Assembly (NCBI RefSeq): GCF_006345805.1 | Contig: NC_042998.1 | Coordinates: 63,922,001 to 63,986,000, forward strand | Direction: 5' to 3' | DNA length: 64,000 nt | Source of the DNA: Octopus sinensis | Lineage: Eukaryota | Shown here: positions 34,465-58,624 of the stretch, piece after piece | How the letters are laid out: every line of letters begins with the position of its first letter | Numbering within the stretch: position 1 is the first letter of the stretch | Notes under the pieces: model-generated | What the model saw: only the letters and a program-made list of their open reading frames with translations | Told to the model about the DNA's origin: nothing | Database searches by the model: none | Program-made: the position numbers and the translations under genes

Positions 34465-34632
34465 ACAGTTCTATATTTAAGAGATGAGGAATTATGTACA
34501 TTATTTACATTTGACGGATATTTGCCCTCATCTTGTTTGTTTTTAACACAACGTTTCGGCTGATATCAGCCGAAACGTTGTGTTAACAACAAACAAGACT
34601 AGGACGAATATCCGTCAAATGTAAATAATGTA
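34465..34632. mobile_element. SINE type D tail fused head-to-head into a 136-bp palindrome
   Basis: 34497-34632 is self-complementary around GAT|ATC (34564/34565) with few mismatches. Confidence 0.9.
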
Positions 34633-34860
34633 AATCTAAAAATGCTTAAATTTTAAAAGGTTATCAACAAGTACAGATAAATGACTGTGGTAGTTTGATT
34701 TAATATGCTCCCATTTGTAATAATTACGTCAGGGTATGAATGTTTTGTGCTAATTTGTTTGAAATTGGTTTAAATGGAAACACTTCCATACAGCATACTT
34801 ACCCGTACGTTATGATGCTGACCATACATATTTTTTTGTAATAGAATATAAAATAATTTG

Positions 34861-37380: not shown

Positions 37381-37382
<2 letters not shown>

Positions 37383-37408
37383 TCCAGGCAGTGACCTGAA
37401 TAATGATA

Positions 37409-37453
<45 letters not shown>

Positions 37454-37625
37454 TCCAAAATACCTTAGGAATGAGAGCCCAGGTTCGAAATTCCCCCAAG
37501 ATACTTGATGAAGGGTGGAGGGTATATAAGCCGAAACGTTGTGTTACCAATAAAAAAGATGAGAACAAATATCCATCAAACGTAAATAATGTACATAATT
37601 CGTCATTTCTTAAATACAGAGCTGT
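37381..37625 (+). mobile_element. SINE type D (end of tRNA head, (AAT)n, hammerhead-bearing tail)
   Basis: attccaggcagtgacctg-(aat)n-aaaataccttaggaatgag...gatgaaggg...gccgaaacgttgtgtt...aaataatgtacataatt. Confidence 0.85.
37499..37545 (+). ncRNA. Degenerate minimal hammerhead motif in SINE D
   Basis: agatac TTGATGA a gggtg gagggtatat aagcc GAAAC GTT gtgtt. Confidence 0.6.
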
Positions 37626-37898
37626 ATAATCACTGCATTGCAACAAATGCAAATGCCAAAGATAAATAAATACCTAATGACAAAAACAGATTTATTGAGG
37701 CGTCCCTTACAATTTATTAGTGTACAAGAGCAGGGTTCGTACAGGAATTGCGATTGCTAGATCGTGTGATTGTTAGGTCTTATTGTTGGTGCATTTTCGA
37801 ATCAAATCAACCGTTAGTGTACATATTATATGTACATATAATCACTAGAATCCAAGCCATGTAAATAAAATGTTTTAAATTCATAGTCGATATAGTAG

Positions 37899-39018: not shown

Positions 39019-39345
39019 GGTTCTCATTCATAAGGTTGTTTCGATGTTGTTGTTATTATTATTATTATTAGTAGTAGTAGTAGTAGGAGTATTTTTTTTC
39101 AGATCACTGCCTGGAATCAAACTCGTAATCTTGGTGTTAGTAGCCCGTGGTCTTAACCTCTACGCCACATGCCCTAAGGTATTTTTCGCATTTTTGGAAA
39201 AATACCTTAGGAATGAGAAGCAAGGTTCAAAATTTCCCAAGACACCTAATGAAGGTTGGTGGGTATATCAGCCGAAATGTTGTGTTTACAACCAACAAGA
39301 TGAGGACAAATATAAATAATATAAATAATGTAGATAATATACCTT
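39019..39345. mobile_element. SINE type D, inverted composite (minus copy with tRNA head, then plus tail)
   Basis: Minus head 39105-39174; hairpin junction cctaaggtatttttcg...ggaaaaataccttagg (39173-39211); plus tail to ~39345. Confidence 0.85.
39241..39286 (+). ncRNA. Degenerate minimal hammerhead motif in SINE D
   Basis: gacac CTAATGA a ggttg gtgggtatat cagcc GAAAT GTT gtgtt. Confidence 0.6.
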
Positions 39346-57636: not shown

Positions 57637-58062
57637 ACATTATTTACATTATGTACATTTGACGGATATTTGTCCTCATCTTTTTGTTTTTAACACAACG
57701 TTTCGGCTGATATACCCTCCAGCCTTTATCACGTTCTTGGGGGAAATTTCGAACCTGGCTTCTCATTCCTAAGGTATTTTTCGATGTTCTTATTATTATG
57801 GTGTAGGGGTTCACAGCGCGGGGCTACTAACCCCAAGATTCCGAGTTCGATTCCAGGCATTGACATCAATAGTAATAACAACAACAATAAAAACTTATGA
57901 ATGAGAACCCAGGTTCCAAATTTTCCCAAGTCAACTTTTGAAGGCTGGAGGGTATATTAGCCGAAACGTTGTGTTAACAACAAACAAGATGAGGACAGAT
58001 ATCCCTCAAATGTAATTAACGTAAATAATGTACATAATTCTTCATCTCTTAAATACAGAACT
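57637..58062. mobile_element. SINE type D composite: inverted tail, tRNA-like head, (AAT)n, tail; two hammerhead motifs
   Basis: Minus arm 57637-57798; head 57799-57865 with A-box-like tggtgtagggg and B-box gagttcgattcc; plus arm to 58062; HHR motifs at 57692-57737 (minus) and 57930-57975 (plus). Confidence 0.85.
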
Positions 58063-58624
58063 GTAATATCTACTATGTTGCTTGTTTGTTTATATAATTT
58101 TGTTTTTATATTTTATTTTCTTTATATAAATTCATTGGGCACTGAGTAAAGTCTGTGAAAATCCAAACTAGATCGAATGTATTGCTTCTCCACAAAAGTG
58201 TTTTTTTCTGTATTTAGACAACCAGTCTTGCCGCCATTGTTTGTCCTGTTGTTTAGCTATTAGTTAGCCCTAATTCAGTTGAACTTTGATGAATATTTAC
58301 GTCGCACGTCAGCTATATTGTGTATACAACGGCGATATAAACTATGGCTTTTCTTTTCTTGAGAGAGTAAATTGAATTGTGATATTGCAGCGGACACACT
58401 TGGGATTTCACACAATAATGGCCTCGACTAAAAGAAACTATATAAGAATTTAAATAGAAAAATTCTCATCATTCTCTCAATTCTCTTATCAATTTATAAA
58501 TGGTCTGAAGATCTCAAGTAACAAAAAGCATCATTTAAAATAAAACTAATTTGATTCCAGGACTGTTATGAATCTGATAGTTTCATGAGTGCAAATTTAA
58601 TTGATATAATTACACATGTATGTA

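What the first reader, a model, noticed from the sequence alone, without database searches (positions are those of the whole stretch)
37381..37625. SINE D tail encodes a minimal dimer-type hammerhead; four copies reconstruct a perfect core
Seen: the core heptamers of four copies are TTGATGA (37505), CTAATGA (39246), GTGATAA (57732-57726, minus) and CTTTTGA (57935). Their position-wise majority is CTGATGA. The consensus is GACAC-CUGAUGA-A-GGCUG[GAGGGUAUAU]CAGCC-GAAAC-GUU-GUGUU, with 5-bp stem I, 5-bp stem II, and no stem III loop but the palindrome AACGUU. Known: Penelope-like elements carry such minimal HHRs that need dimerisation, and an extra A after A9 is tolerated (CChMVd viroid). Every copy here has at least one core lesion, so none is predicted to be active.
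Basis: partly seen in the sequence, partly recalled or inferred. Interest (0 to 1): 0.8.

Follow-up and report, generated by a model that had tools for sequence, protein, structure and literature searches.

The report
Penelope-type minimal hammerhead in a SINE
The finding holds: a short, very abundant mobile element in this AT-rich 2.7-Gb animal genome carries a stripped-down hammerhead self-cleaving RNA motif of the kind known from Penelope-like retrotransposons; about 2,000 genomic copies keep the core and helix II letter-perfect, the four copies in this window are dead, and cleavage has never been tested.

Summary
The four heptamers sit where stated, and their majority is CTGATGA. About 8,400 lie within two mismatches, which suggests roughly 20,000 copies.

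The motif has every hallmark of the minimal hammerheads of Penelope-like elements (PLEs). It has no helix III loop, a palindromic 15.2-16.2 pair, an extra base between A9 and G10.1, a G10.1-C11.1 pair and a 5-bp helix I.

The carrier is a composite of a tRNA-like head, an (AAT)n stretch and a 190-nt tail. Its insertions look like PLE insertions. In 19 of 20 cases a neighbouring copy is inverted with the 5' ends facing. About half the copies carry an optional 36-nt 3' extension. Partial tandems also occur.

One core variant has amplified: N7 U-to-A, 297 copies, at the only freely variable core position. The neighbouring A6-to-U change has 9 copies.

No partner PLE was found, Rfam's hammerhead models miss the motif, and catalysis is untested. 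I rate it a new member of a known kind, of moderate interest.

The parts
37381..37626 (+). Copy 1 of the SINE, 5'-truncated. It holds a head remnant (about 37382-37398), an AAT-rich stretch, and the tail from about 37465. It sits next to a (TA)n microsatellite and ends with the long type of 3' end.
37500..37545 (+). Hammerhead motif of copy 1. Parts: helix I 5' strand 37500-04, core 37505-11, extra A 37512, helix II 37513-17 with 37528-32, GAAAC 37533-37, GUU 37538-40, helix I 3' strand 37541-45. If intact it would cut between 37540 and 37541. It is dead: C3 to U and a helix II mismatch.
37591..37626 (+). Optional 36-nt 3' extension, present in about half of the family's copies.
39189..39338 (+). 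Copy 2: tail only, with the short type of 3' end. Hammerhead motif at 39241-39286, with G5 to A and 15.2 C to U.
39019..39188 (-). Inverted partner of copy 2. It holds the tRNA-like head on the minus strand (about 39100-39171), a 17-nt snap-back of the tail start, and a tail fragment at 39019-39049 cut off by a (GT)n run.
57637..57788 (-). Copy 3: tail with the short 3' end, 5'-truncated within (AAT)n. Hammerhead motif at 57736-57692, with core GTGATAA at 57732-57726 and a 1-nt deletion in helix I.
57800..58065 (+). Copy 4, full length: head from 57800, a short AAT/AAC run, and a tail with the long 3' end. Hammerhead motif at 57930-57975 with core CTTTTGA. With copy 3 it forms an inverted pair whose 5' ends face each other.
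34465..34635 (.). Two 5'-truncated tails joined head to head inside loop 2 (minus arm 34465-34566, plus arm 34563-34635). Both keep CAGCC-GAAAC-GTT-GTGTT but lack the CUGAUGA half.

Best explanation
The region is a decayed, 5'-truncated copy of a composite SINE with roughly 20,000 copies. The SINE has a tRNA-like head with A- and B-box motifs, an internal (AAT)n run and a tail of about 190 nt.

The tail holds a type-I hammerhead of the Penelope-like-element (PLE) minimal class. It has a 5-bp helix I, the core CUGAUGA, one extra A, a 5-6-bp helix II, GAAA, and only A15.1-U16.1 and C15.2-G16.2 with no loop.

A single molecule cannot close helix III. Its lowest-energy fold instead pairs G5-G8 with C15.2-U17. 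Two copies, in a tandem transcript or in trans, could pair their ACGU/AACGUU palindromes to build the extended helix III of a double hammerhead and cut after GUU.

I infer that the tail is a module taken from the 3' end (pseudo-LTR) of a PLE, and that the SINE is copied by PLE reverse transcriptase and GIY-YIG endonuclease.

Shown: the motif, its copy numbers, the insertion architecture and the lesions. Inferred: the PLE origin, mobilisation by a PLE, and any cleavage. The four window copies are inactive relics.
For: Motif and counts:
- 934 exact 42-mers, 1,991 exact 35-mers and 8,393 copies within 2 mismatches. The reversed-pattern controls gave 0.
- The chance rate of the descriptor is 1 site per 20 Mb or less.

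PLE minimal-hammerhead hallmarks not forced by the core (PMC4209133) are all present: the extra base between positions 9 and 10.1, G10.1-C11.1, a palindromic 15.2-16.2 pair, a 4-5-bp helix I and no loop 3.

Insertion signature matches that described for PLEs (PMC8557442; PMC11167929):
- 19 of 20 neighbouring copies are inverted with 5' ends facing, 0 have 3' ends facing, and 1 is direct.
- In the exact-match lists, six close inverted pairs all run minus-then-plus.
- Inverted 5'-truncated tails are fused directly to the first base of a full-length head (L019, L027, L021).
- Tail-tail partial tandems occur (L010; C1:210736057 and 210736252, 195 nt apart).
- 3' ends are bimodal, 28 short and 26 long by about 36 nt, and this does not track the sequence variants.

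Other support:
- The head is followed by the tail in 24 of 28 cases.
- PLEs with intact 762-883-aa frames are abundant: 4,846 GIY-YIG candidates.
- The N7 U-to-A variant has 297 copies against 9 for the adjacent A6-to-U change.
- Helices I and II lie within 1.4 kcal/mol of the lowest-energy fold.
Against: - No partner PLE sharing the tail was found. The flanks of three intact PLE open frames (L054-L057) show no similar motif.
- Rfam's hammerhead models give no hit on an intact copy, even at E of 10 or less.
- Helix III in trans is only 4-6 bp, about -3.5 kcal/mol. The monomer's lowest-energy fold hides the core.
- Covariation is weak and could reflect relatedness: 5 pairs changed on both sides against 1.7 in shuffles, reached by 4 of 500 shuffles.
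- Across decayed copies the motif is no better conserved than the rest of the tail: 7.9% against 7.5% mismatch.
- None of about 12 5'-truncated copies starts at the predicted cut site.
- In the one PLE studied in vitro, hammerhead mutants did not impair insertion.
- ARAGORN and Rfam do not call the head a tRNA.
Confidence: 0.65

Rival explanations
1. The motif is real and derives from a hammerhead, but in this SINE it is only a structural passenger. Helix II and the 3' hairpin would serve as binding sites for the reverse transcriptase, and self-cleavage would play no part in the element's life cycle.
For: - In the PAc Penelope-like element, hammerhead core mutants did not affect insertion, and no RNA ends mapped to the cut site.
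- Naiad PLEs thrive without hammerheads.
- Cleavage after GUU would separate the head from the 3' end that must prime reverse transcription.
- No truncated copy starts at the cut site.
- 5' truncations cluster in helix II and loop 2 (tail columns 74-89), as expected if a stable hairpin stalls reverse transcriptase.
Against: - The only amplified core variant found lies at N7, the free position: 297 copies against 9 for A6 to U. A mere hairpin would not protect the single-stranded core letters.
- The core stayed intact in the source elements long enough to seed about 2,000 perfect copies.
Confidence: 0.3
2. The element is an ordinary LINE-dependent SINE, for example with an R4/Dong, CR1 or RTE partner. 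Its tail would resemble a hammerhead by convergence or chance, and the short TGTAAATAA repeats would be a LINE-type 3' end.
For: - The short-type 3' ends finish in 2-3 copies of a 9-mer, as in many stringent LINE/SINE pairs.
- The internal (AAT)n run recalls microsatellite-tailed SINEs.
- No PLE partner was found.
Against: - The chance rate of the descriptor is 1 per 20 Mb or less, and the unforced PLE hallmarks are all present.
- Inverted pairs in which both arms keep their 3' ends pointing outward (19 of 20) are not what LINE twin priming makes. They are what priming on both strands by a PLE predicts.
- The optional 36-nt extension occurs in every sequence variant.
Confidence: 0.1
3. The inverted pairs are the true unit: a foldback or MITE-like DNA transposon. 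The long ends read TA-CAGTTC..., reminiscent of Tc1/mariner termini. Single copies would then be half-elements.
For: - The long 3' end, read on the other strand, begins TACAGT.
- Pairs are very frequent.
Against: - The arms join at variable truncation points, from tail column 4 to 137 or within the head.
- The two arms of a pair often have different 3' end types, as with window copies 3 and 4.
- Ten of 29 loci hold a single copy with a tRNA-like head and 5' truncation. Two of those ten still have an inverted head abutting.
- Arms are no more alike than random copies: 91.6% identity in both comparisons.
Confidence: 0.04

Closest known systems
Minimal type-I hammerheads of Penelope-like elements (Cervera & de la Pena 2014, PMC4209133; Lunse, Weinberg & Breaker 2017, cited in PMC7761336)
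   Same: No helix III loop, a palindromic 15.2-16.2 pair, an extra base between A9 and G10.1, G10.1-C11.1, a 4-5-bp helix I without loop-loop contacts, thousands of dispersed copies per animal genome, and a predicted dimeric mode of action.
   Different: Here the motif sits in a tRNA-headed SINE and not in the pseudo-LTR of an element with an RT/GIY-YIG frame. Helix II is 5-6 bp, against the 7-8 bp typical of schistosome families. The family is sequence-homogeneous, whereas most animal PLE hammerheads are reported as highly variable.
Sm-alpha SINE-like elements of Schistosoma with an active hammerhead (Ferbeyre et al. 1998; from my own knowledge, cited in PMC4209133)
   Same: A short, high-copy, non-coding retroposon with Pol III-type promoter boxes that carries a type-I hammerhead.
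   Different: Sm-alpha has a canonical hammerhead with loop-loop contacts and a short closed helix III. This one is the loop-less minimal class with the extra base.
Animal non-LTR retrozymes (PMC7229834; bioRxiv 10.64898/2026.07.22.740005)
   Same: Non-autonomous, hammerhead-bearing elements proposed to derive from PLE pseudo-LTRs and to be mobilised by PLEs.
   Different: Retrozymes are tandem arrays of units of about 300 bp with canonical type-I hammerheads, expressed as circular RNAs. This family is dispersed, mostly as single copies or inverted pairs, has a tRNA-like head and has a minimal hammerhead. The same genome also holds a retrozyme-like canonical family.
Rfam Hammerhead_1 (RF00163)
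   Same: The same catalytic core letters and the same order of helices.
   Different: The model does not score an intact copy at all, because helix III is missing and there is an inserted base.

Membership tests
Hammerhead ribozyme, type I | Invariant core C3 U4 G5 A6 N7 G8 A9 ... G12 A13 A14, the A15.1-U16.1 pair, and H17 that is not G | tested here: met
   Met by the family consensus (A1) and by 1,991 exact genomic copies. Not met by any of the four window copies.
Hammerhead ribozyme, type I | Three helices around the core, all able to form in one molecule | tested here: not met
   Helices I (5 bp) and II (5-6 bp) form. Helix III is 2 bp with no loop and can form only between two copies.
Hammerhead ribozyme, type I | Site-specific self-cleavage after position 17 | not testable with these tools
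   No biochemical or RNA-end data are available. No 5'-truncated copy starts at the predicted site.
Rfam Hammerhead_1 / Hammerhead_3 covariance models | A score at or near the gathering threshold | tested here: not met
   No hit in the window, nor on the intact copy L005 at E of 10 or less.
PLE minimal hammerhead (min-HHR) | No helix III or loop 3, with a palindromic 15.2-16.2 pair | tested here: met
   GAAAC-GUU: C15.2-G16.2, the palindrome ACGU (AACGUU), in 29 of 39 distinct rows.
PLE minimal hammerhead (min-HHR) | An unpaired base between A9 and G10.1, and a G10.1-C11.1 pair | tested here: met
   The extra A is invariant in A1 (column 18). G-C at 10.1-11.1 occurs in 34 of 39 rows.
PLE minimal hammerhead (min-HHR) | Short helix I (4-5 bp) and a longer helix II (6-8 bp) | tested here: inconclusive
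   Helix I of 5 bp is met. Helix II is 5 bp plus one G-U pair, 6 in all, at the low end of the range.
PLE minimal hammerhead (min-HHR) | Location in the pseudo-LTR of an element that encodes RT and GIY-YIG | tested here: not met
   The motif lies in a non-coding SINE. The flanks of three intact PLE frames lack it. Other PLE families were not sampled.
Element mobilised by PLE machinery | An inverted 5'-truncated copy adjacent to the 5' end, and partial tandems | tested here: met
   19 of 20 neighbours are inverted with 5' ends facing. Six of six close inverted pairs in the exact-match lists have the same sense. Tandems occur in L010 and at C1:210736057/210736252.
Element mobilised by PLE machinery | An optional 30-40-bp extension at the end of a fraction of copies | tested here: met
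   26 long against 28 short 3' ends, differing by about 36 nt.
Element mobilised by PLE machinery | A 3' sequence shared with an autonomous PLE of the same genome | tested here: inconclusive
   Not found in the two ORF families sampled. The limit on genome letters prevented a full survey.
tRNA-derived SINE | An internal Pol III promoter (A and B boxes) in a tRNA-related head | tested here: inconclusive
   TGGCGTAGTGG and GAGTTCGATTCC fit the A- and B-box consensus by eye. ARAGORN and Rfam find no tRNA.
Non-LTR retrozyme | Tandem arrays of units of about 300 bp with hammerheads, giving circular RNAs | tested here: not met
   Copies are dispersed, and direct tandems are rare (1 of 20 neighbours). 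Circular RNA cannot be tested here.

The most novel reading that the evidence does not exclude
A major tRNA-headed SINE family of this (probably octopus) genome is copied by Penelope-like elements and not by LINEs. It would have captured a PLE 3' module, and the minimal hammerhead in that module would be kept under purifying selection in the source copies. That would explain many of the 'dispersed' minimal hammerheads of animal genomes as SINE parasites of PLEs, and would point to PLEs as a driver of at least part of the SINE expansion.
Probability: 0.45. Interest if true: 0.7.

Novelty: new member of a known kind. Interest (0 to 1): 0.5.

Why it matters
Minimal hammerheads are already known to occur by the thousands in animal genomes, and their role is still called a mystery (PMC7761336).

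This family offers an unusually clean case. It is homogeneous, with about 2,000 copies that keep the core and helix II letter-perfect. It has a recognisable Pol III-type head. Its insertion architecture (inverted pairs, optional 3' extension) mirrors what purified PLE protein does in vitro.

If PLEs mobilise a tRNA-headed SINE, that widens the accepted rule that SINEs depend on LINEs. It would also bear on which enzymes drove SINE expansion in this lineage.

The contrast of 297 against 9 copies, between the free core position and its neighbour, gives a simple and extendable test for selection on the ribozyme.

Tried and rejected
1. An apparent dead-core lineage (CTGTTGA or CTTTTGA in 5 of 49 sampled copies) suggested that catalysis is dispensable. 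Genome-wide there are only 9 exact copies against 934. The excess came from my BLAST query, window copy 4, which carries those changes and so pulled in similar copies. The 37% share of U at position 11.5 was the same artefact; an unbiased listing gives about 4%.

2. Search for a partner PLE. A GIY-YIG scan found many intact PLE frames. The 3' flanks and one 5' flank of three copies (L054-L057) show no similar tail or hammerhead.

3. Rfam scans of the window and of an intact copy found no hammerhead.

4. Similarity between the two arms of inverted pairs, as a test for origin in a single event, was uninformative: 91.6% identity against 91.6% for random pairs.

5. Conservation of the motif relative to the rest of the tail shows no difference among decayed copies, as expected for neutral decay.

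6. A MITE or foldback reading of the inverted pairs was rejected because the junctions vary and the arm ends differ.

7. Literature searches for the sequence, and for octopus SINEs with hammerheads or PLE partners, found nothing.

8. The organism was not verified.

Full report
**The observation**

Their position-wise majority is CTGATGA. They belong to four homologous copies of one repeat. Two more 5'-truncated copies, joined head to head inside loop 2, lie at 34465-34635.

All four motif-bearing copies carry core lesions. Copy 1 also has a helix II mismatch, copy 3 a 1-nt deletion in helix I, and copy 4 a broken closing pair of helix I. Neither Rfam nor ARAGORN reports anything in the window.

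**The genome-wide family**

The window comes from a 2.72-Gb, AT-rich assembly of 13,516 contigs. I take it to be an animal and probably an octopus, but I did not verify this.

Whole-genome pattern counts:
| Pattern | Copies |
|---|---|
| Exact 42-nt motif | 934 |
| 42-mer within two mismatches | 8,393 |
| 35-mer covering core, helix II and GAAACGU, with W at N7 and Y at position 11.5 | 1,991 |

The reversed-pattern controls gave zero matches. The ratio of exact to near-exact copies implies about 7.4% divergence per site and roughly 20,000 copies. That agrees with the 7.5% I measured directly.

Among copies I had not selected by similarity, 5 of 20 still satisfy a minimal-hammerhead descriptor.

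**Chance**

I wrote a descriptor with these terms:
- helix I of at least 4 bp;
- CUGANGA;
- an optional extra base;
- helix II of at least 4 bp;
- GAAA;
- a palindromic helix III remnant;
- U, then H.

It hit one site in 20 Mb of Markov-random sequence. It hit none at this motif's helix lengths. For one consensus of about 300 nt, that is a probability of order 1e-5.

**Which kind of hammerhead**

The paper that defined PLE minimal hammerheads lists features that emerged without being imposed by the search (PMC4209133):
- a base between positions 9 and 10.1;
- a conserved G10.1-C11.1 pair;
- a palindromic 15.2-16.2 pair;
- a short helix I;
- no loop 3.

All are present here. The extra A is therefore a class hallmark and not a tolerated oddity.

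Rfam's Hammerhead_1 model does not score an intact copy, as expected for this class. The same model does find a separate, canonical type-I family in this genome.

**Folding**

For an intact copy, helices I and II lie within 1.4 kcal/mol of the lowest-energy fold. The lowest-energy monomer extends the hairpin by pairing G5-G8 with C15.2-U17, which hides both the core and the cut site (z = -1.9). The intermolecular AACGUU duplex is worth only about -3.5 kcal/mol. This fits an RNA that is silent alone and at best weakly active when two copies meet, as reported for PLE motifs.

**The carrier element**

The unit has four parts:
- a head with A- and B-box-like motifs;
- an (AAT)n run;
- a constant leader;
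- a tail of about 190 nt holding the hammerhead, a 9-10-bp 3' hairpin and TGTAAATAA repeats.

The head is followed by the tail in 24 of 28 assessable cases. Inverted truncated tails are fused directly to the first base of the head (L019, L021, L027). So the composite is the unit that gets copied.

**Insertion architecture**

Of 29 loci centred on one copy, 18 hold a second tail copy. In 19 of 20 pairings the neighbour is inverted with the 5' ends facing. None has 3' ends facing, and one is direct.

The unbiased exact-match lists show the same. Six close inverted pairs all run minus-then-plus, and two close pairs are direct, one of them 195 nt apart.

The 3' ends are bimodal: 28 stop in the 9-mer repeats and 26 run about 36 nt further. 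Both end types occur in every sequence variant.

These three traits are the published signature of PLE insertions (PMC8557442):
- an inverted 5'-truncated copy at the 5' end;
- partial tandems;
- an optional 30-40-bp extension.

They match the in vitro behaviour of a purified PLE protein, which cleaves and extends both DNA strands and starts reverse transcription at two internal sites (PMC11167929). LINE twin priming would not leave both 3' ends pointing outward.

**Selection**

Decayed copies show no extra conservation of the motif, as expected. Covariation on A1 is slightly above shuffles, with 5 pairs changed on both sides against 1.7. Some of those cells come from CpG decay or doubtful alignment, so I call this suggestive only.

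A better signal comes from the variant counts. N7 is the one core position that hammerheads leave free, and the N7 U-to-A variant has 297 exact copies. The same kind of change at the adjacent essential A6 has 9. That is one data point, but it points to constraint on the core in the source copies.

**A correction to my own sampling**

My BLAST query was window copy 4. It enriched for copies that share its private changes, which produced a false 'dead-core lineage' and an inflated U at position 11.5. The genome counts corrected both.

**What is missing**

PLEs are abundant: 4,846 GIY-YIG candidates, with open frames of 762-883 aa.

No truncated copy begins at the predicted cut site. Truncations cluster in helix II and loop 2 instead.

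In the one PLE tested in vitro, hammerhead mutants inserted normally. The motif may therefore be a passenger or a protein-binding structure.

**Verdict**

This is a PLE-class minimal hammerhead carried by a tRNA-headed SINE with a PLE-like insertion signature. It is a new member of a known kind. Catalysis and the partner element remain open.

I found no prior description of this SINE or of a link between octopus SINEs and PLEs in the searchable literature.

Noticed in passing
L031-L040 (e.g. G000:C13:29988995-29989039; C16:25146363 and 25146794): A separate canonical type-I hammerhead family, with core CUGAAGAG, a closed 2-bp helix III and an AUGU loop. It scores up to 48 bits on Rfam RF00163. 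Two copies lie 431 nt apart on C16, which suggests a retrozyme-like tandem repeat.
   Followed up: partly
L034:1686-1728 (+), with an inverted copy near L034:734-776: A third hammerhead-like motif (CCAC-CUGAAGA-UUGUC...GACAA-GAAAC...GUA-GUGG) with an unusual U10.1-A11.1 pair. It is present as an inverted pair flanking a canonical hammerhead unit.
   Followed up: no
L010:1229-1420, L025, L029, L004: A conserved stretch of about 190 nt precedes the tRNA-like head in some copies. Internally deleted variants join it straight to the tail (L004) or to the head (L029). A longer 5'-extended form of the element may therefore exist.
   Followed up: partly
window 37508-37585 and all intact copies: The AUG inside the CUGAUGA core opens a 25-codon frame that runs through the hammerhead to a stop in the TGTAAATAA repeats. 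In the anole PLE studied in vitro, the ORF likewise starts inside the hammerhead. This could be a relic of a PLE ORF start.
   Followed up: no
tail columns 74-89 (e.g. window 34563-34566, L003:1712, L027:1754, L015:2005, L032:1146): Six of about twelve 5'-truncated copies begin within loop 2 or the 3' strand of helix II. This suggests that reverse transcription stalls or switches template at that hairpin.
   Followed up: partly
G000, 149 listed places (e.g. C6:12733272, C10:27570372, C8:18818750): PLEs with a C-terminal GIY-YIG domain are very abundant, and many have intact frames of 762-883 aa. Many listed places have the identical score (31.4 bits), and seven of those have an intact 781-aa frame, which implies recent activity. 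The 3' flanks of the copy examined at C6:12733272 carry repeated TGATGACGTC-containing units and no recognisable hammerhead.
   Followed up: partly
window 39172-39205: A 17-nt snap-back: the start of the tail occurs as a short inverted repeat at the junction between copy 2 and the inverted head. It looks like a template-switch scar.
   Followed up: no
L002, L005, L008, L019, L023, L029, window 57920-57927: Some copies have TTTT instead of TTTC about 15 nt upstream of the hammerhead. In those copies a Pol III transcript from the head might terminate before reaching the ribozyme.
   Followed up: no
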